IMG/VR virus record: IMGVR_UViG_3300034072_000758
Span: 310,001-374,000 of that record
Strand: one strand, 5' to 3'
Length of the DNA stretch: 64,000 bases
In this document: one piece after another, positions 11,795 to 44,570 of the stretch
How the letters are laid out: each line of letters starts with the position of its first letter
How positions within the stretch are numbered: position 1 is the first letter of the stretch
The notes under the pieces: model-generated
Seen by the model: the letters and a program-made list of their open reading frames with translations, nothing else
The model's database searches: none
Told to the model about the DNA's origin: nothing
Translations under genes and position numbers: made by a program

Positions 11795-12630
11795 GAAACC
11801 CTGAGACTAGAGGCTTCGTAACCGTCTTTCGCATGGATTATGATCCGCTTGCGGCGAACTTTCCCAGCTTATCCACGATACCCTTGCGGTATATCGTATC
11901 GGCTAATGTCGCAACTTATAGAGCGCTTGCTGCGGCGCTTACCCACGTGACTTACTCGGCACTTCCCAAATCGCCGAAACCCGCTAAGGTTCCATTTGGA
12001 CAGCATGACCCGTCCTACGACTCTTCCTTTACCAACACATCCGAGCTTTGCGGCCCATCAGTGACCCGATTCCTTGCGGTCAGGTGTTAGACATTTTGTA
12101 GTCACGCAGAGAGGTAGACTTTGCGTTTTTAATTCGAAGCAGGAATTGAACCTGCGACATATGGTATGGAAAACCATTGCTCTACCAAACTGAGCTATTC
12201 GCAACTTACGAAGACGTGCCACCTCTGTTGCTTCATGGCTTTCACCACAAAATACAACACGCCTAGTACCTTTCTCACCGCTAAGTGATACTCAATCTTG
12301 ATACAGGACCGAAACCCCACATCAATCCTAACCGCCCTTGGCCGCTAAACCTCGAACTAATTAGATACCCGTTAAATATCACGCGGGAATGGTTTGCGTG
12401 TTTGGCAGGGCTTGCGGACCCCTTTATGCTACTCCATGCTTTCACAGAGGAAGCAACACTACCACCTTTCGGTGACCAAACCCATTCATCGCGTTAGTTC
12501 CTATCGTTTGGCAATAGAAACGTCTCTCGACTATTTCGGGCTTGCTTGGTTATACTGTATTGCTACAGCGGGACTATGTAAGCTTCATCCCTTTCAGCTA
12601 GTTGCCTAGCTTTATCGTCCCAAGCGACAA
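11795..12630 (-). ncRNA. Large structured ncRNA of about 835 nt, probably GOLLD RNA
   Basis: No credible ORF; own TTGACT-N17-TATATT promoter (12664-12636) and terminator; many GCAA/GAAA/GAGA-capped hairpins on the minus strand; embedded tRNA-like domain. GOLLD assignment rests on size, architecture and recalled motifs, not a covariance-model search. Confidence 0.7.
12132..12204 (-). tRNA. tRNA-Gly(TCC)-like domain embedded in the large ncRNA, with degenerate acceptor stem
   Basis: D arm GCTC-AGTTTGGTA-GAGC, anticodon arm ATGGT-TTTCCAT-ACCAT, T arm GCAGG-TTCAATT-CCTGC; only 4 bp of acceptor stem, no CCA. Confidence 0.7.
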
Positions 12631-18508: not shown

Positions 18509-19240
18509 TTAGCGGGCTTTTTTCTTTGTCTTTTGTGTAATGTGCGGGGGTGCTTCTAGCAAAATTTCTTTGGTCTGATAGAATTTCATTAAGTTTTCCA
18601 TCTTAACCCTGAAAGCGGTTCCTCGATCATGAATGCAACCCTTCGACATGCTGTATCCAATTCGGAAATCCACCCTAACAGTATTCAATATTTCTTCCCA
18701 GAATTGATCAACGTTGAAGTCTGTATATAGTGTAATTTTGGTAAAAATAAAATATTTCTTTCCATCTATTTTCTTTCGAATCGCCTCAATTACAACCAAA
18801 TTAGTGAGTTTGTTTATAAGTTTAATCGACAAATCTGAGTAATTCCATTCACCGAAAAACGTCTCTCCATCTTTCAAGATTAGTTTGCTATCTGTTTTGA
18901 TGAATGAAAACGGCAAATTCATAGAAGAATCTTTAAAGAACACTTTTCGATTTTTCTTGTCTTCGTAAGAAAAATTTTCATATATGTATCTAGTTGATCC
19001 CGGTGGTGTTGAAGTAAGACAAGTTATTAACGTCGAGAGACTAACTTTTACTTTAAGCTCATACCCTTTGAAATCGGCAAATTTATTATTGTTTTCGGGG
19101 ACACCAATCAAAGTTTCAAATGTGTGTCCAGCATCACCATCACAACCGTTTTCTTCTTTAGAAGCCGGAATTAATTTAAAATTCATGAGCATTTCATTTT
19201 GATGTATTGCTTCAAGAAGGTAGTTTTTATTACTGGACAT
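18509..19240 (-). CDS. MvaI/BcnI-family PD-(D/E)xK endonuclease
   Basis: GHTFETLIGVPENN..ADF.GYELK, LIT.LT..P, KL.NLV.IEA, HDRGTAFR; low GC. Confidence 0.8.
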   Translation of the reverse strand: MSSNKNYLLEAIHQNEMLMNFKLIPASKEENGCDGDAGHTFETLIGVPENNNKFADFKGYELKVKVSLSTLITCLTSTPPGSTRYIYENFSYEDKKNRKVFFKDSSMNLPFSFIKTDSKLILKDGETFFGEWNYSDLSIKLINKLTNLVVIEAIRKKIDGKKYFIFTKITLYTDFNVDQFWEEILNTVRVDFRIGYSMSKGCIHDRGTAFRVKMENLMKFYQTKEILLEAPPHITQKTKKKAR

Positions 19241-19361
19241 TATACGCTTTACTCCACTAAGCTCCCACCTTAGCAAAAAGTATTTGCGCATTACAATTTA
19301 AATCACAAAAAAGACCCGCCGATTACTCGACGGGTCCAGTTTGATACGCTTGTGAAGGAGA

Positions 19362-22921: not shown

Positions 22922-22962
22922 GCTATTGACATTGGGTATAGAGGTAGCTTATAAATACATCA

Positions 22963-23292
22963 TCACTGTTTGACGACTGTGTAATAGGCTTGGTAAGACG
23001 GGAGTTCGACTCTCCCCGCCTCCACCATTGAATACATTAGTTGCTAGGTAGCCCCTAGTACGGAATATAGGATTGATCATCCTTAGCAGGTTCGAATCCT
23101 GCCCGAATGTGTTCTATTATGGGGGCGTTTTGGTTTCGATTATCGGCTGACGGACAGGAATAGGTGACGGTAAGAAACGACCGACCAATCAGTTCAAATT
23201 CATACTTGCCAACGACAACGTTGACATGAAGGACATGGCGCTCGCCGCCTAATCCATTCGGGGCTTGAGAGAGCCTAGCAACAGAATCTCTC
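22963..23292 (+). ncRNA. ssrA: Circularly permuted two-piece tmRNA (alphaproteobacterial type), tag ANDNVDMKDMALAA
   Basis: Acceptor piece ends GACGGGAGTTCGACTCTCCCCGCCTCCACCA (23027); coding piece starts GGGGGCG (23121) with G3.U70; tag 23208-23252; GGGC..GAGAGA-GCCT-AGCAACAGAA-TCTCTC pseudoknot; TTGACA and TATAAATA promoter at 22926-22957. Confidence 0.93.
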
Positions 23293-23293
23293 G

Positions 23294-23399
23294 TTCTATC
23301 TACAGAGTCCGGCCCCACAAGGGAAAGGCGTACAGACGGTTATATTGTTAGATACAGAACTTCACTTCGGTGCCTTCTGTGTGGCCATGTAACCTAGAA
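23294..23399 (+). ncRNA. Candidate structured RNA co-transcribed after tmRNA
   Basis: Nested stems TTCTA/TAGAA, TACA/TGTA, GGCC/GGCC enclosing ACAGAA/TTCTGT with a C(UUCG)G loop; no ORF; lies upstream of the terminator. Confidence 0.45.
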
Positions 23400-36223: not shown

Positions 36224-37387
36224 TTAGTTGAACTCGGTGGCGTTTTTACGCAGGATGTAGTCTGGGGAGACCCACTTCCCGATTTTCCGGCCACGCAGGA
36301 GCGACCGGCCTTCGGTCACCGTCTTGATAACGATGCCTTCCCGAACGTGGATGCCTGACAGCGTATCCTTGCCGTCGCGCACGGCTTCCAGTGCCGCCAG
36401 ATCGTATTGGCCACGATACAGGACCGGGGCGACCGGAATACCCAGCTTCGCCGCCAGAGCTTCGAAAACCTCATAAGATACGAACTCGTACCCGATTTGG
36501 ATGTCGAAGATGTAGAGCGTGGGCTTCTTGAAGCCGTAGGTCAGGTCTTGGATACCTTCGCCGAAGATTTCACCGAAGACACGCACCGGCTGACCGTACT
36601 CGTCCGAGATAGCCTTGATCAGTTCACCGAAGCCGTTTTCGACCAGCGGCTTGAGCATCCGAACATAGACGTTCTTGAGCGCGTTGGCTTCGTTATCCTT
36701 GAAGACCAGCCCTTGTGCCGCCATACCCTTCGAGCCGACATACAGATTGCCGTCGAAGAACAGTTCGTCGTTATTCAGGCCGGGGACATAACCGATCTGA
36801 ACGTGAGTACCGTGAAGCTTTTCAGTCGCCACGACTTCATCCGACGAATCGAAAGTATCCGGGTAATTCTGAACGCTTTCGAAATCGTACTTGTGGGTAT
36901 TGCCCGAAATATTACAAACATCGCCCGCAAAGTTCGTAGGGACGGGTGGTTCGTACTTGGTGATACCAAGGAACTCGGCCACGTTGTCGCCTTCCAGAAC
37001 GGTCAGAATATGTTCGCCGTTCGGGCTTTCGATCACGTCCGAAACTTCGCCGCATCCCATATCGTATTTCGAAATGGGATACAGGACGCCTTGCGAGAAG
37101 ATGCCACGCAGACGCTTGGCCTTGACACGATCACCCTTCTTACCGGCGAGGAAGCCGACATTCTTTTCATGGTCCCAGAAGTCCATGAAGCGCAGAACAT
37201 CTTCGGGAAGAACGGCGGCTTCGGGAATGTAGGCTACGAGATCGCCCGCCTGATAGCGGTGAGAGCCATCTTCCAGCTTACCAGAAATACACAGAAAGCC
37301 CTTGATTTGGATGATCGACAGACGATCCGCATCCGGGTGATGATCGACAGAGAGAATCTTGGTCACTTCGACCGCAAAACTTGACAT
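36224..37387 (-). CDS. RNA ligase (DRB0094/Rnl5 family) with N-terminal OB domain
   Basis: HPDADRL, RLRGIFSQG, motif I EKLHGT, FGEIFG.GIQ, FDI, motif IV EGIVIK, K.VS..Y. Confidence 0.9.
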   Translation of the reverse strand: MSSFAVEVTKILSVDHHPDADRLSIIQIKGFLCISGKLEDGSHRYQAGDLVAYIPEAAVLPEDVLRFMDFWDHEKNVGFLAGKKGDRVKAKRLRGIFSQGVLYPISKYDMGCGEVSDVIESPNGEHILTVLEGDNVAEFLGITKYEPPVPTNFAGDVCNISGNTHKYDFESVQNYPDTFDSSDEVVATEKLHGTHVQIGYVPGLNNDELFFDGNLYVGSKGMAAQGLVFKDNEANALKNVYVRMLKPLVENGFGELIKAISDEYGQPVRVFGEIFGEGIQDLTYGFKKPTLYIFDIQIGYEFVSYEVFEALAAKLGIPVAPVLYRGQYDLAALEAVRDGKDTLSGIHVREGIVIKTVTEGRSLLRGRKIGKWVSPDYILRKNATEFN

Positions 37388-40342: not shown

Positions 40343-40600
40343 TTACTTTTGCCATATATGAGACTGTTCATCAACCTTTACCGGAAAGGTATGAACAGTC
40401 GTGCGAAAAAGAAAGTCCGATCCCATCTGACCAACAAGTCGATCAGTAAATGCTTCTGGGGTATAGTGATCGTTTACCCCAGCTAGGATCGCCGTCTTCA
40501 ATATGGCTTCGCATTCGTTGCTATCATCAAACTTATCCATATCGACAAACCATAAACGGCTATTCCGATCATTATAAGTTTCAACAACAGCATATATCAT
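40343..40600 (-). CDS. Hypothetical protein in the tRNA operon
   Basis: Coupled to the Nudix gene. Confidence 0.6.
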   Translation of the reverse strand: MIYAVVETYNDRNSRLWFVDMDKFDDSNECEAILKTAILAGVNDHYTPEAFTDRLVGQMGSDFLFRTTVHTFPVKVDEQSHIWQK

Positions 40601-41097
40601 TTTTGCCTTTCGAACCAGCTTTTAACCACATCGGTATGAGACCCGAAGCAAAGTTCTTCCGGTTCCAAAATGGCTCGGATTGCTGGCACTTCATTGGTTG
40701 GAACGAAGTCTTTCAAAACTTGTGCCATCGGAATAGGCGTCTTAGCTTCGCAAAAGGCCATCATATTACGACCGTTGTTGTATGAACTTATCAGACGAAC
40801 ATCAACCGGGTCAATAACCAGTCCAGTTTCTTCCACAAGCTCACGTACCGCAGCATGTTCGATAGAAGCGTCAGAAAGCTCTTGGAAGCCACCTACGAGC
40901 GCCCAGCCGTCCTTACAAGGTTGAATGCCTCGTTGGGCTACCAGAAGGCCCACAGAGCCTAATGGGAACGATACCGGTAAGAGAAGTACAGCAACCCCGA
41001 TTGGGTTGATGAATGTGATGTTGCCGCAGCTTGAACAAGCCTTGGGGTACTCAGTCGCGGTATGCTCGGTGCCGCAGAATTTACAGAACTTGTCCAT
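40597..41097 (-). CDS. Zinc-ribbon Nudix hydrolase
   Basis: FCKFCG..CSSCG..F.NP; WALVGGF...AAVRELVEETG. Confidence 0.88.
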   Translation of the reverse strand: MDKFCKFCGTEHTATEYPKACSSCGNITFINPIGVAVLLLPVSFPLGSVGLLVAQRGIQPCKDGWALVGGFQELSDASIEHAAVRELVEETGLVIDPVDVRLISSYNNGRNMMAFCEAKTPIPMAQVLKDFVPTNEVPAIRAILEPEELCFGSHTDVVKSWFERQK

Positions 41098-41122
41098 TTA
41101 TATCGCCAGAATTTTTACGGAG

Positions 41123-41207
41123 CGGAAGCGGTGGGATTCGAACCCACGGAACCTTACGGTTCGGAAGTTTTCAAGACTTCTGGGATAAACCTCTCCCCCA
41201 CGCTTCC
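41123..41207 (-). tRNA. tRNA-Ser(TGA), no CCA
   Basis: GAAGT-CTTGAAA-ACTTC, long variable arm, G73. Confidence 0.92.
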
Positions 41208-41496: not shown

Positions 41497-41586
41497 TGGC
41501 GGATGGTGAGGGATTTGAACCCCCGGTTCCTTTCGGAACGCCAGTTTTCGAAACTGGTGCAATCAGCCGGACTCTGCCAACCATCC
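41497..41586 (-). tRNA. tRNA-Ser(CGA) with CCA
   Basis: CCAGT-TTCGAAA-ACTGG, long variable arm, G73. Confidence 0.93.
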
Positions 41587-41587
41587 G

Positions 41588-41662
41588 TGGACTATGATGG
41601 AATCGAACCATCGCTATCGTTGAGTTACAACGACGACCTATCCTTTACAGGTCTGATAGCCC
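41588..41662 (-). tRNA. Atypical tRNA-like RNA: Ala-type acceptor (G3.U70, A73) with nominal AAC anticodon
   Basis: GGGCTAT/ATAGTCC-A; 5-bp D stem GACCT/AGGTC; TCGTT-GTAACTC-AACGA; canonical T arm. Confidence 0.7.
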
Positions 41663-41673
41663 TTAATTTTAAT

Positions 41674-41762
41674 TGGGGGACGGGTGGGATTCGAACCCAC
41701 GGAACCTTCTACAAGACCCTCCCGCGTCAATCGGGACACCTTAAGCCACTCAGTCACCGTCC
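41674..41762 (-). tRNA. Atypical tRNA-Ser(TGA)-like gene (6-bp acceptor, C discriminator, CCA)
   Basis: GGACGG/CCGTCC-C-CCA; TCCCG-ATTGACG-CGGGA; long variable arm. Confidence 0.65.
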
Positions 41763-41767
41763 ATCAA

Positions 41768-41980
41768 TTAAACCGTCTGTTCTTCGATCAAAGACATATG
41801 CTTCCTGATCCAACGCATAAAGAACAATCCTTTATCCTTGGTCAAGAAGCGGGCAGTCCCGCAATCGGAGATCGGAACCGGAAACTCAAACCCATCTTCG
41901 CAGCGATAGATCAAGTTGCCGTCCTGATAGTGAACGAAGTTTACTTCGCCTTTTACTCTTGTTTTAATGTCAGCCATCAC
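41768..41980 (-). CDS. Small hypothetical protein in the tRNA operon
   Basis: ..GNLIYRCEDGFEFPVPISDCGTARFL..DK..FFMRWIRK; AAGGG SD. Confidence 0.7.
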   Translation of the reverse strand: MMADIKTRVKGEVNFVHYQDGNLIYRCEDGFEFPVPISDCGTARFLTKDKGLFFMRWIRKHMSLIEEQTV

Positions 41981-42000: not shown

Positions 42001-42084
42001 TGGTGTGTCGTGATGGATTCGAACCACCGTGCCTTTCGGATGGGGGTTACAACCCCACGCAATCAACCGCTCTGCCAACGACAC
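42001..42084 (-). tRNA. tRNA-Tyr(GTA), copy 2, with CCA
   Basis: TGGGG-TTGTAAC-CCCCA, long variable arm, A73. Confidence 0.9.
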
Positions 42085-42227: not shown

Positions 42228-42312
42228 TGGTGTATGGTGCTGGATTCGAACCAGCGCGCCTTTCGGAACAGATTTACAGTCTGTCGGTATCGACCAACTC
42301 ACCCAACCATAC
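42228..42312 (-). tRNA. tRNA-Tyr(GTA), copy 1, with CCA
   Basis: ACAGA-CTGTAAA-TCTGT, long variable arm, A73. Confidence 0.92.
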
Positions 42313-42313
42313 G

Positions 42314-42385
42314 TACTCGGTAATGGAATCGAACCATTATCTTCGGAGCCACAATCCGACGCTCTTACCGTTGAGCTAACCAAGC
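42314..42385 (-). tRNA. tRNA-His(GTG), alphaproteobacterial type without G-1 (G1.U72, A73)
   Basis: U at -1; GCTTGGT/ACCGAGT-A; TCGGA-TTGTGGC-TCCGA. Confidence 0.9.
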
Positions 42386-42467: not shown

Positions 42468-42544
42468 TGGGGTGACCAACGGGATTCGAACCCGCGCTTG
42501 GAGATTCACAGTCTCTCGTGCTAACCGCTAACACTATGGCCACC
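42468..42544 (-). tRNA. tRNA-His(GTG), canonical G-1:C73 type with CCA
   Basis: G-GTGGCCA/TGGTCAC-C-CCA; anticodon loop CTGTGAA. Confidence 0.92.
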
Positions 42545-42554
42545 ATAAAGATCG

Positions 42555-43167
42555 CTACAGAGCTAACATCAGTCGATCAACTCCAATCGCCCAACCAATA
42601 CCTTCTGAGTATCGGCCACCACCGGCAATCTGTTTTTGTGCTCCAAGTTTGGAACACTCTGCTTCGAAACCTTCTTCAACATAATAGGTCAAACCGCGCT
42701 TAACCGAGTCCGTGAATGAGTATTCGACGCCAAGCTTGTCTAAACACAACTTCAAAAGCCTCTTGGCCTCTTCTGTCGAATTGTCAACTTCACCGAGGAT
42801 TTCCACACCAAATTGGGTGAACTCTCGATAACGACCAGCTTGAGGTCGTTCGTAGCGATAGCACCGGGAGACGTAGAAAATCCTCTTGGACTTACTTGTC
42901 TTTGACCAGTTATCCCGCCAAAGTTCTTGGACTAAGCCGGTGACTTCGGGGATCAAACATACCGGACGGTTTGCCTTATCCTCGAAAGCCCACATTTGAT
43001 TGATGATCTCAGACCCCGCCTTGTCGATGAACGTTTGTTGTTCCCACAAGGCTGGAAGAATCACTTCCTCAAATCCAGCTTCAATGAAGAGACCCCCTAA
43101 GAGCCTCGATTACACGGACGTAGGACTTAGCTTCGTCCCCTTCCAAAATTCTCGTACCTCGTAACAT
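42555..43167 (-). CDS. hisS: Minimal catalytic-domain-only histidyl-tRNA synthetase (about 203 aa); needs a +1 shift near 43093-43101
   Basis: MLRGTR..; GFEEVILP (motif 1), LIPEVT, YRYERPQAGRYREFTQFGVE (motif 2), RGLTYY, GGGRY, GWAIGVDRL (motif 3); no insertion or anticodon-binding domain; frame break at CTT AGG GGG T. Confidence 0.85.
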
Positions 43168-43463: not shown

Positions 43464-43766
43464 TTAATTTTTGCGGGCGTTGTAGACGAATCTCCCAACC
43501 TCTTTATTATTATGAGAAGCGATAACAATGGTCGTCGCAAACGTGTCAATATCGGAGTTATCATCAACCGGTGGCTGAGACATTGTTAACTTATATCCAT
43601 ATTTTTTAGATAAATCGACAAACTCTTTCAATTGCTGACTAGAATTTCGTCCAGCAATACCACCAAAATCAAGACGCAGATAATTATTACTTGGGTTGAT
43701 GTCTTGAACCGAAGCCTCATTCAACACCATCTTGTTTTGAATTTCTCTATACCATTCGTTGTCCAT
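43464..43766 (-). CDS. Hypothetical late protein
   Basis: TAAATA-N5-ATG; VLNE motif. Confidence 0.65.
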   Translation of the reverse strand: MDNEWYREIQNKMVLNEASVQDINPSNNYLRLDFGGIAGRNSSQQLKEFVDLSKKYGYKLTMSQPPVDDNSDIDTFATTIVIASHNNKEVGRFVYNARKN

Positions 43767-43814
43767 GCTTGTATTTATTTGACTTTTAGTAAAGTTGTAT
43801 GTATAACAATATAC

Positions 43815-44570
43815 ATGAAAAGATTACTGATCCTCAGCCTTGTGCTGGCCTCCTTCTCTACACCTTCCTATGCGGCTCAAAAGAAGCCGTTGCCTAATGC
43901 TGTCTGTGCGCCACTAATCAAACATGTCAGCGTCATTCCGGGGCAAATGATTTGTCGTGCTGGGTACGTGGCGATCTATGACGCTCGCAACCGTATTCCA
44001 GAAATGGTGATATACAATAATGACCGAGCAAAGCTGTCAGCTTGTGGGAAACGTACTGATCGGTTCCAGCGAGACGAGAGTGTCAGTGATGGTGCTCTCC
44101 CAGCAGACTACACCGGGACAGGATATGATCGCGGTCACATGGCTCCGAACAATGACATGATTTACGATCCAGTCATTGAAGAAGAGAGCTTCATCATGAC
44201 CAACATTGTTCCCCAAAAGCCAACCCTCAATCGTGGCATCTGGAAGGAACTGGAAACTCATGCTCGTGAAAAATCATACGCGGTGGGTAATCTAACAATT
44301 ATCACCGGGGTCATCTATCGCCCGAATAATGCTCGCCTCAAGGGGCGGGTTCTGATCCCAGATGGCTTCTATAAAATATTGGTCGATCATAAAGCTAAGA
44401 CGACCGAGACATATATCATGTATCAGAACGACAAGACCGGGCCTATTTCATCCTATCTGAGCACTCGAAAAGAAGTCCAGCGCTTGACCGGCCATCGTTT
44501 TAACTTGGACGGTTATCAAGACGCCAAGTGGACAATCAGTTATCGAAACATCCACAAGGAGTGTAAATAA
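43815..44570 (+). CDS. Secreted DNA/RNA non-specific endonuclease (NucA/EndoG family)
   Basis: Signal peptide MKRLLILSLVLASFSTPSYA; DY...GYDRGHMAP, SF.MTNIVPQ...LNRGIWKELE, IPDGFYKI. Confidence 0.9.
   Translation: MKRLLILSLVLASFSTPSYAAQKKPLPNAVCAPLIKHVSVIPGQMICRAGYVAIYDARNRIPEMVIYNNDRAKLSACGKRTDRFQRDESVSDGALPADYTGTGYDRGHMAPNNDMIYDPVIEEESFIMTNIVPQKPTLNRGIWKELETHAREKSYAVGNLTIITGVIYRPNNARLKGRVLIPDGFYKILVDHKAKTTETYIMYQNDKTGPISSYLSTRKEVQRLTGHRFNLDGYQDAKWTISYRNIHKECK

What the first reader, a model, noticed from the sequence alone, without database searches (positions are those of the whole stretch)
41588..41662. tRNA-like RNA with alanine identity but an AAC-centred, non-canonical anticodon arm
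Seen: acceptor GGGCUAU/AUAGUCC-A with G3.U70 and A73, an intact T arm, a 5-bp D stem, C at position 8, and the loop G-U-AAC-U-C, where G32-C38 can pair and position 37 is U. Established: G3.U70 is the major AlaRS identity element. Inference: it could insert Ala at Val codons, act as a non-decoding Ala carrier, or serve as a decoy for tRNA-targeting enzymes. No leader core codon matches it, which suggests it is not a replacement decoder.
Basis: partly seen in the sequence, partly recalled or inferred. Interest (0 to 1): 0.65.

Follow-up and report, generated by a model that had tools for sequence, protein, structure and literature searches.

The report
Phage tRNA: alanine end, valine anticodon
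A huge phage carries a conserved tRNA gene whose amino-acid end looks exactly like an alanine tRNA but whose anticodon reads the valine codon GUU, so it is a candidate natural "mistranslating" tRNA in a virus and not a decaying pseudogene.

Summary
Window 41588-41662 (- strand) is a 75-nt cloverleaf. It has G1-C72, G2-C71, G3.U70 and A73, a normal T arm, a 5-bp D stem, C8 and the loop G-U-AAC-U-C.

It is not a pseudogene. Two other huge-phage lineages carry homologues with the same 7-nt loop, G3.U70 and A73. In these, 13 of 22 stem pairs have changed on both sides. The gene diverges at the same rate as ordinary tRNAs.

Among 1280 distinct tRNAs from about 160 related phage loci, the full alanine acceptor signature occurs in 33 of 38 tRNA-Ala. 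Outside tRNA-Ala it occurs only in this family.

The loop oddities are not unique to it. G32 and U37-C38 each occur in otherwise ordinary tRNA-Val of related phages.

GUU is the commonest Val codon in all three phages. It still means Val, because GUU codons align with Val in homologues.

Best reading (about 0.4): host AlaRS charges it with alanine and it pairs weakly with GUU, making it a natural Val-to-Ala missense tRNA. Rivals are a non-decoding alanyl-tRNA-like RNA or decoy, an ordinary Val decoder, and a dead gene.

The family is rare, with three lineages and no member found in cellular genomes. It is a new variant of a known kind (hybrid-identity tRNAs) and I found no description of one in phages.

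The parts
41588..41662 (-). Hybrid-identity tRNA gene (75 nt, positions 1-73 in tRNA numbering; no CCA encoded)
   Evidence: ARAGORN. Cloverleaf MFE, z = -5.0. Covariance models R1/R2 give 92-97 bits here and 87-103 bits in homologues, against 50 bits or less for any other tRNA.
41656..41662 (-). Acceptor stem 5' strand GGGCUAU (G3 at 41660)
   Evidence: G1-C72, G2-C71 and G3.U70 are invariant in 5 of 5 homologues, while pairs 4-6 covary.
41588..41595 (-). Acceptor stem 3' strand AUAGUCC (U70 at 41591) plus discriminator A73 (41588)
   Evidence: The GGG..UCC-A signature is found only in tRNA-Ala and this family.
41635..41655 (-). C8-A9 and an atypical D arm (5-bp stem GACCU/AGGUC, loop GUAAAGGAU keeping G18G19)
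   Evidence: Position 8 is C, U or G in the three lineages. Four of five D-stem pairs change on both sides.
41617..41634 (-). G26 and the anticodon arm (stem UCGUU/AACGA, loop GUAACUC at 41622-41628, anticodon AAC at 41624-41626)
   Evidence: The loop and the two closing U-A pairs are invariant in all lineages, while the outer stem pairs covary. RNAalifold closes G32-C38 and G26.U44 into a 7-bp helix with a 5-nt loop.
41596..41616 (-). 4-nt variable loop UAGC and canonical T arm (GAUGG-UUCGAUU-CCAUC)
41497..41587 (-). 1-nt spacer (C, 41587) and the next gene, tRNA-Ser(cga). This is the processing context: RNase P cleavage of the Ser tRNA would leave the 3' end as A73-C, to be completed by the CCA-adding enzyme (inferred).
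   Evidence: No terminator-like site lies between the genes on the - strand.

Best explanation
It is a functional phage tRNA gene of hybrid identity. It belongs to a small conserved family found so far in three huge-phage lineages.

Proposed mechanism:
1. It is transcribed within the - strand tRNA array and cut out by the ordinary tRNA-processing enzymes.
2. It is completed with CCA.
3. Because its acceptor end cannot be told apart from the phages' own tRNA-Ala (G1-C72, G2-C71, G3.U70, A73), the host alanyl-tRNA synthetase charges it with alanine. That enzyme ignores the anticodon.
4. Its anticodon loop is a valine-type loop (U33, A35, C36, with the G32 and U37-C38 variants seen in the clade's tRNA-Val). 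Its anticodon AAC is complementary to GUU.
5. The product, Ala-tRNA(AAC), therefore reads GUU and inserts Ala in place of Val. It probably does so inefficiently, because G32-C38 can close the loop and position 37 is U.

What is shown: the structure, the conservation, the covariation, the Ala-exclusive acceptor signature, the Val-type loop and the codon statistics.

What is inferred: expression, processing, alanylation, delivery to the ribosome, and any benefit. One possible benefit is reading the phage's commonest Val codon independently of ValRS or tRNA-Val when these are disabled. Another is low-level proteome diversification.
For: 1. Real and selected.
- Three lineages: window; L066/L074/L086/L105; L088=L172.
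- 98.2% of pair cells are standard pairs. 13 of 22 pairs changed on both sides. 0 of 500 shuffles reach this. RNAalifold finds the same cloverleaf.
- Identity between phages is 0.65-0.72, against 0.51-0.73 for ordinary tRNAs with the same anticodon.

2. Alanine end.
- G3.U70, G1-C72, G2-C71 and A73 are invariant while pairs 4-6 flip.
- This signature occurs in 33 of 38 tRNA-Ala and in none of the other roughly 1240 distinct tRNAs of the clade except this family.
- An acceptor-pair likelihood puts it with tRNA-Ala.
- In L088 the 3' acceptor strand is identical to that of the phage's own tRNA-Ala(UGC).
- The next-best covariance-model hit is a tRNA-Ala.
- A G.U at 3:70 impairs E. coli ValRS (PMC9976931). 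G3:U70 suffices for AlaRS, and natural G3:U70 tRNAs with non-Ala anticodons are alanylated in E. coli (PMC5389517, PMC11415595).

3. Valine end.
- The loop GUAACUC is invariant.
- G32 occurs in 6 ordinary tRNA-Val and U37-C38 in 2 of them, all from related phages.
- GUU is the top Val codon in all three phages, at 39%, 48% and 32%.
- Two of the lineages also carry other A34 tRNAs: Thr-AGU, Asn-AUU and Arg-ACG.

4. Only a missense role needs both ends to be conserved.
Against: - GUU is the phages' own commonest Val codon and still means Val. 18 GUU codons in ClpA and portal align to V 0.32 / A 0.16, like GUG. Efficient Val-to-Ala decoding would therefore damage phage proteins.
- G32-C38 together with U37 occurs only in this family. 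It is predicted to close the loop to 5 nt.
- Position 8 is not conserved and RF00005 scores only 17 bits, so the tRNA core is atypical.
- There are only three lineages, and two come from one sample.
- No expression, charging or proteomic data exist.
- No partner gene is conserved nearby.
Confidence: 0.4

Rival explanations
1. A non-decoding tRNA-like RNA. It is alanylated or merely bound by AlaRS and/or ValRS, and it works off the ribosome. It could be an alanine donor, a decoy or sponge for a host enzyme that recognises a Val-type anticodon loop (an anticodon nuclease, ValRS or a modification enzyme), or a regulator.
For: - RNAalifold and MFE folds close G32-C38 and G26.U44 into a 7-bp helix with a 5-nt loop UAACU in all lineages.
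- U37 together with G32-C38 occurs only in this family among about 1270 loops.
- U8 is not conserved and the Rfam tRNA score is 17 bits.
- This reading avoids the cost of mistranslating the phage's commonest Val codon.
- Phage tRNAs are known to counter host tRNA nucleases (PMC10264068, PMC11464382, PMC11555353).
Against: - A pure Ala carrier needs no conserved Val-type loop, and a pure anticodon-loop decoy needs no conserved G3.U70. Neither alone explains both.
- No Fem-like or other aminoacyl-transferase and no conserved partner gene lies near any copy.
- The individual loop oddities occur in presumably working tRNA-Val of related phages.
Confidence: 0.3
2. An ordinary GUU decoder charged with valine. 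It would be one of the A34 tRNAs these phages carry for their U-ending codons. G3.U70 would be tolerated by the host ValRS, and any Ala mischarging would be removed by editing.
For: - A35, C36 and A73 are the main valine determinants (PMC9976931).
- GUU is the top Val codon.
- It co-occurs with Thr-AGU, Asn-AUU and Arg-ACG.
- Canonical tRNA-Val(AAC) exist in relatives L125 and L142.
- A bacterial A34 tRNA is known to read an NNU codon (PMC9262613).
- Cross-editing of Ala-mischarged tRNA is known in vertebrates (PMC7337962).
Against: - None of about 60 ordinary tRNA-Val in the clade has G3.U70.
- A G.U at 3:70 impairs ValRS (PMC9976931).
- Under this reading nothing would keep G.U from drifting to G-C, yet it is invariant while 13 other pairs changed.
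- The acceptor stem matches the phages' tRNA-Ala.
Confidence: 0.17
3. A non-functional relic or neutral passenger of tRNA-array shuffling, for example a chimera of tRNA-Ala and tRNA-Val genes.
For: - The family is very rare. It is found in 3 IMG/VR contigs and 2 JGI metagenome contigs, and in 0 of 185,579 species genomes.
- It scores below threshold on Rfam.
- The adjacent tRNA-Ser-like gene at 41675-41763 does look degenerate.
Against: - Compensatory changes occur in 13 of 22 pairs with 98% pairing.
- The loop, G3.U70 and A73 are invariant.
- Divergence equals that of working tRNAs.
- The folds are stable in all copies.
Confidence: 0.07

Closest known systems
Natural alanine-identity tRNAs with non-alanine anticodons: allo-tRNAs with G3:U70 (Mukai et al. 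2017, PMC5389517), tRNA-Ala(CAG) of Pachysolen-clade yeasts and human tRNA-Ala anticodon variants (review PMC11415595)
   Same: An acceptor stem carrying the AlaRS determinant G3.U70 sits on a body whose anticodon belongs to another amino acid. This is possible because AlaRS ignores the anticodon.
   Different: - This one is phage-encoded.
- It has a 7/5 class I body, not 8/4 or 9/3 with a long variable arm.
- Its anticodon is AAC (Val).
- Its loop has G32-C38 and U37.
- No charging or decoding data exist.
- The review has no phage example.
Bacterial deliberate-mistranslation tRNAs (tRNAProX/ProA with ProRSx; PMC10404621) and nematode nev-tRNAs (PMC3333845)
   Same: A conserved, genome-encoded tRNA family whose charging identity and anticodon disagree.
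   Different: - Those families use proline or leucine identity, and tRNAProX has a dedicated synthetase paralogue.
- No dedicated synthetase is seen near this one.
- The host AlaRS would suffice.
Phage tRNAs with altered anticodon loops proposed or shown to escape host anticodon nucleases (PMC10264068; T5 tRNA-Lys versus PARIS, PMC11464382; tRNA-Tyr versus retron effectors, PMC11555353)
   Same: A phage tRNA array contains variants with non-host-like anticodon loops. Pyrimidine-37 variants are common in this clade.
   Different: Those tRNAs keep matching identity and anticodon. They replace a cleaved host tRNA rather than carrying another amino acid's acceptor stem.
tmRNA tRNA-like domain and plant-virus valylatable tRNA-like structures (TYMV)
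   Same: - tmRNA: a G3.U70, AlaRS-charged, non-decoding tRNA mimic.
- TYMV TLS: a viral RNA with valine determinants A35, C36 and C38 (PMC9976931).
   Different: - The element has a complete cloverleaf with an anticodon arm and no mRNA-like domain.
- The phage's own permuted tmRNA is elsewhere, at 22922-23295.
- It is a free-standing gene, not a genomic 3' end.

Membership tests
Canonical elongator tRNA (Rfam RF00005) | Score at or above the family gathering threshold (29 bits) | tested here: not met
   17.0 bits, as a local match to model positions 4-67. No hit at all in the wider scans.
Canonical elongator tRNA (Rfam RF00005) | Cloverleaf with 7-bp acceptor, 5-bp T stem, T loop UUCRANY and G18G19 | tested here: met
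Canonical elongator tRNA (Rfam RF00005) | U8, purine 37, unpaired 32-38 | tested here: not met
   Position 8 is C, U or G in the three lineages. U37 is present. G32-C38 is Watson-Crick.
tRNA-Ala (AlaRS substrate) | G3.U70 in a regular acceptor helix with A73 and G2-C71 | tested here: met
   Invariant in 5 of 5 sequences. The signature is exclusive to tRNA-Ala plus this family in 1280 tRNAs.
tRNA-Ala (AlaRS substrate) | Anticodon NGC | tested here: not met
   The anticodon is AAC.
tRNA-Ala (AlaRS substrate) | Actually charged with alanine | not testable with these tools
   Needs an aminoacylation assay.
tRNA-Val (ValRS substrate) | A35, C36 and A73 | tested here: met
   Identity set as given in PMC9976931.
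tRNA-Val (ValRS substrate) | Regular acceptor helix without a G.U at 3:70 or 4:69 | tested here: not met
   G3.U70 is present. 0 of about 60 clade tRNA-Val have it.
allo-tRNA (8/4 or 9/3, Mukai 2017) | 12-bp acceptor branch split 8/4 or 9/3, with a long variable arm | tested here: not met
   The split is 7/5 and the variable loop is 4 nt.
tmRNA tRNA-like domain | No anticodon arm; linked mRNA-like domain with a tag reading frame | tested here: not met
   A full anticodon arm is present. Rfam places the tmRNA at 22922-23295.
Hybrid-identity (mistranslating) tRNAs | Acceptor identity set of one amino acid with the anticodon of another, conserved across genomes | tested here: met
Hybrid-identity (mistranslating) tRNAs | Demonstrated misincorporation | not testable with these tools
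   Needs a reporter or proteomics. Codon alignment only shows that GUU is not reassigned.
tRNA pseudogene | No conservation; broken pairs | tested here: not met
   98.2% of cells are paired, 13 pairs covary and the loop is invariant.

The most novel reading that the evidence does not exclude
A virus encodes a dedicated missense tRNA. The family is conserved in huge phages. Host AlaRS charges it and it reads GUU, the phages' commonest valine codon. This would either produce programmed low-level Val-to-Ala substitution during infection, or act as a synthetase-bypass that keeps ribosomes moving at GUU when host tRNA-Val or ValRS is disabled by a defence system.
Probability: 0.3. Interest if true: 0.8.

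Novelty: new variant of a known kind. Interest (0 to 1): 0.6.

Why it matters
Phage tRNAs are currently explained by codon supply or by replacing host tRNAs cut by defence nucleases. In both cases the tRNA carries the amino acid its anticodon calls for. A conserved phage tRNA whose charging end and decoding end disagree would add a third category.

The question is directly testable with a 75-nt transcript, AlaRS and ValRS, and a GUU reporter.

It also bears on how freely tRNA-Ala bodies can acquire new anticodons in nature.

The survey further shows that this huge-phage clade is rich in non-canonical tRNA bodies: pyrimidine-37 loops, odd D arms in tRNA-Ala, and long variable arms on Lys, Asn, Ile and Glu tRNAs. 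Standard tRNA models under-call these.

Tried and rejected
- Isotype by sequence profile. nhmmer profiles of each isotype with the loop removed gave only weak, inconsistent scores (Val, Leu or Ala on top for the three copies), so they were uninformative.
- Conserved partner gene. tblastn of all ORFs from window 30-52 kb against all loci found only the 70-aa protein shared with the other X loci.
- Own promoter or terminator. Consensus sites are at chance level.
- More family members:
  - Three exact-motif scans of IMG/VR found only the three known contigs. The other 7 pattern hits failed the covariance model.
  - Two scans of 185,579 species genomes gave 0 and then 18 motif hits, none of them a family member.
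  - GenBank phages gave only T-arm matches.
  - The first 50 kb of Sinorhizobium phage Phosso has none.
- Codon reassignment GUU to Ala: rejected.
- GUU avoidance by the phage: rejected.
- Ideas considered from memory and dropped for lack of any test or support:
  - mimicry of 23S helix 69 (shared GUAACU)
  - a T-box specifier ligand (no T-box in the window; the host is probably alphaproteobacterial)
  - a second tmRNA acceptor piece
- In-window AlaRS, ValRS, tRNA deaminase or Fem-type transferase: none among the ORFs scanned.

Full report
**Setting**

The window is part of a huge T4-like phage.
- It is 99-100% identical to IMG/VR contig IMGVR_UViG_3300034072_000758, which is 516,805 bp.
- It encodes a Gp23 capsid protein, Gp20 portal, prohead protease, tail sheath, ClpA-like ATPase, RNA ligase, three NUDIX proteins, a Ros/MucR regulator and a permuted (alpha-type) tmRNA.
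- The host is probably alphaproteobacterial. ClpA is closest to alphaproteobacterial ClpA at about 49% identity. The Ros/MucR regulator and the tmRNA type point the same way. The only DNA match to a cultured phage is Sinorhizobium phage Phosso.
- ARAGORN finds 14 tRNA genes. Thirteen lie on the - strand between 35.5 and 42.5 kb, and one more is at 12130-12205.

**The observation**

- The 75-nt RNA read from 41662 down to 41588 has acceptor GGGCUAU/AUAGUCC with G3.U70, and discriminator A73.
- It has C8, a 5-bp D stem, a D loop that keeps GG, and G26.
- It has a 5-bp anticodon stem, the loop G-U-A-A-C-U-C, a 4-nt variable loop and a canonical T arm.
- ARAGORN calls it tRNA-Val(aac).
- It folds into the cloverleaf with z = -5.0.
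- Rfam's tRNA model gives it only 17.0 bits (gathering score 29). Twelve of the other window tRNAs score 48-75, and the adjacent tRNA-Ser-like gene at 41675-41763 scores 28.7.
- A single C separates it from the next gene, tRNA-Ser(cga). No CCA is encoded.

**It is conserved, so it is not a decaying pseudogene**

I used the 70-aa protein next to it (41768-41980, PHROG 20427) to fetch about 160 loci from related huge phages. I then searched them by blastn/nhmmer, by exact motifs and by two covariance models.

Homologues exist in two further lineages:
- L066:7502-7576, with the near-identical copies L074, L086 and L105
- L088:10247-10321, which is the same as L172

All are 75 nt. The models score them at 87-103 bits. 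The next best hit anywhere is an ordinary tRNA-Ala(CGC) at 50 bits.

Across the five distinct sequences:
- 98.2% of pair cells are standard pairs.
- 13 of 22 pairs have changed on both sides.
- No shuffle and no slid register comes close to this.

RNAalifold recovers the cloverleaf independently.

Invariant features are G1-C72, G2-C71, G3.U70, A73, A9, the GG of the D loop, G26, the whole 7-nt loop GUAACUC and the two U-A pairs that close it.

Between phages the gene is 65-72% identical. Ordinary tRNAs with the same anticodon are 51-73% identical, so it evolves like a working tRNA.

The phages themselves are distant. Apart from the 70-aa protein (54-58% identity), no gene within about 10 kb of the window copy is shared with the other loci. 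The flanking tRNAs also differ (Ser/Ser, Ile/Glu, Lys/Asn).

**The acceptor end is an alanine end**

I parsed 1280 distinct ARAGORN tRNAs from these loci.
- A fully paired stem beginning GGG and ending UCC-A occurs in 33 of 38 tRNA-Ala. This is G1-C72, G2-C71, G3.U70 and A73.
- Outside tRNA-Ala it occurs only in this family, and in none of about 60 ordinary tRNA-Val.
- A simple likelihood on acceptor pairs ranks tRNA-Ala first for all three lineages.
- In L088 the 3' acceptor strand is identical to that of the phage's own tRNA-Ala(UGC) at L088:3214.
- Several tRNA-Ala of the clade also have a non-U8 and odd D arms, as this family does.

Established knowledge:
- G3:U70 is the major AlaRS determinant and AlaRS does not read the anticodon.
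- Natural G3:U70 tRNAs with foreign anticodons are alanylated in E. coli (PMC5389517; PMC11415595).
- A G.U at the third acceptor pair impairs E. coli ValRS (PMC9976931).

That the host AlaRS charges this RNA is inferred from these rules. It is not shown.

**The anticodon end is a valine-type loop, and its oddities are clade habits**
- Pyrimidine-37 is recurrent in these phages. It occurs in about 20 tRNA-Asp with CUGUCUA or CUGUCCA, and in Ile, His and Glu tRNAs.
- Two otherwise ordinary tRNA-Val(GAC) have the loops AUGACUC and CUGACUC. They share U33, A35, C36, U37 and C38 with this family.
- G32 occurs in six ordinary tRNA-Val, with loops GUGACAU or GUUACAU.
- Only the combination G32 + C38 + U37 is unique to the family. 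Just 4 of about 1270 loops have G32 with C38, and 3 of those are this family. Folding predicts that it closes into a 7-bp helix with a 5-nt loop.
- A34 tRNAs with canonical loops also occur in the clade: Val-AAC, Thr-AGU, Leu-AAG and Asn-AUU. The two non-window lineages carry Thr-AGU, Asn-AUU and Arg-ACG beside the element.

**Codon tests**
- GUU is the most used valine codon in all three phages (39%, 48% and 32% of Val codons). It is not avoided relative to other U-ending codons.
- I aligned the window's ClpA and portal genes with about 119 homologues each. The 18 GUU codons sit over V 0.32, A 0.16 and I 0.14. GUG gives V 0.32 and A 0.17. Alanine codons sit over A 0.38-0.73.
- GUU therefore means valine in this phage. 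Any alanine inserted there would be mistranslation, not recoding.
- The L088 phage also has two tRNA-Ala(UGC), Val(UAC) and Val(GAC). The element is thus an extra species, not a replacement.

**Interpretation**

Two ends are conserved together: an alanine-exclusive acceptor and a valine-type anticodon loop.
- A pure alanine carrier does not need the loop.
- A pure anticodon-loop decoy does not need G3.U70.
- An ordinary valine decoder should have lost the G.U, which would both hinder ValRS and invite AlaRS.

The reading that needs both ends is an alanine-charged tRNA that pairs with GUU, so I put it first at about 0.4. The closed loop, U37 and the cost to the phage's own GUU-rich genes argue that decoding, if it happens, is weak.

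Rival readings:
- non-decoding role (alanyl-tRNA-like effector, ValRS or nuclease decoy): about 0.3
- ordinary Val decoder: about 0.17
- dead gene: about 0.07

The selective benefit is unknown. A synthetase-independent way to read GUU when tRNA-Val or ValRS is attacked, or low-level proteome diversification, are speculations.

**Rarity and novelty**

The family was found in three IMG/VR contigs and two JGI metagenome contigs. It was not found in 185,579 species genomes or in GenBank phage records at the sensitivity available.

Hybrid-identity tRNAs are known in bacteria, yeasts, nematodes and humans (PMC5389517, PMC10404621, PMC3333845, PMC11415595). I found no phage example in the searched literature. 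I therefore rate it a new variant of a known kind.

**Limits**
- There are only three lineages, and two are from one sample.
- The tRNA census rests on ARAGORN calls and on my own parsing of the stems.
- The loci cover only 5-8 kb on each side of one marker gene.
- Nothing here shows expression, charging or decoding.

Noticed in passing
window 41675-41763 (-): The tRNA-Ser(uga)-like gene 12 nt upstream of the element looks degenerate. RF00005 gives 28.7 bits, just under threshold. It has a U1.C72 mismatch, C73 in place of G73, and C at position 37. Its fold is no better than shuffles (z = +0.65). No homologue was found in the other loci. A normal tRNA-Ser(uga) lies at 41122-41207.
   Followed up: partly
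window 42555-43064 (-), with tRNA-His at 42313-42385 and 42468-42543: A 169-aa ORF matches only the N-terminal part of the histidyl-tRNA synthetase class II core (Pfam profile positions 34-143 of 308). It sits directly beside two different tRNA-His genes. One has A73 and no encoded CCA. The other has C73 and an encoded CCA. Sinorhizobium phage Phosso has a similar short 'histidyl-tRNA synthetase' CDS (591 nt) next to its tRNA-His.
   Followed up: partly
window 41768-41980 (-); L002-L166: A 70-aa protein (PHROG 20427, motifs EDGFEFPVP and MRWIRKH) is found in hundreds of huge-phage contigs: at least 428 metagenome and 129 IMG/VR hits. It is usually embedded in tRNA gene arrays. A tRNA lies within 500 nt in 34 of 60 loci, and the median is 12 tRNAs per 16 kb. 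Its function is unknown.
   Followed up: partly
loci L002-L166 (e.g. L088:3436, L091:8348, L136:1680): Pyrimidine at tRNA position 37 is recurrent in this phage clade. It occurs in about 20 tRNA-Asp (loops CUGUCUA or CUGUCCA) and in Ile (CUGAUUA), Val(GAC), His and Glu. These may be anticodon-loop variants that escape host nucleases or modification.
   Followed up: partly
loci L014-L166 (e.g. L099:10844, L142:4072, L090:9004): About 70 distinct tRNAs of 83-96 nt have a long variable arm but carry Lys, Asn, Ile(UAU), Glu, Gln, Met, Cys, Gly or Thr anticodons. Several tRNA-Ile(UAU) share a CCAGAUUAG motif in the extra arm. The charging identity of these type-II-like tRNAs is unclear.
   Followed up: no
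window 42001-42084 / 42228-42312, 42313-42385 / 42468-42543, 41122-41207 / 41675-41763: tRNA genes come in same-anticodon pairs with different bodies (Tyr x2, His x2, Ser-UGA x2). The window holds five tRNA-Ser genes in all. Related loci show the same pairing (Gln, Ile, Pro, Asp, Lys).
   Followed up: no
window 22922-23295 (+): A permuted (two-piece, alphaproteobacterial-type) tmRNA gene is encoded by the phage (RF04321 97.5 bits, RF01849 72.3 bits).
   Followed up: no
window 36224-37387 (-), 40597-41097 (-), 43632-44570 (+), 18509-19291 (-): An RNA ligase (PF09414 plus the PHA02142 OB domain) and a NUDIX hydrolase lie inside the tRNA array. A secreted-type DNA/RNA non-specific endonuclease lies just beyond it. 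An MvaI/BcnI-family restriction endonuclease lies next to the capsid genes.
   Followed up: no
L088:14748-14818 and L105:2594-2664: A 71-nt tRNA-Asn(AUU)-like gene is 92% identical between two phages whose other tRNAs are mostly 59-73% identical. It is another A34 tRNA and seems unusually conserved.
   Followed up: no
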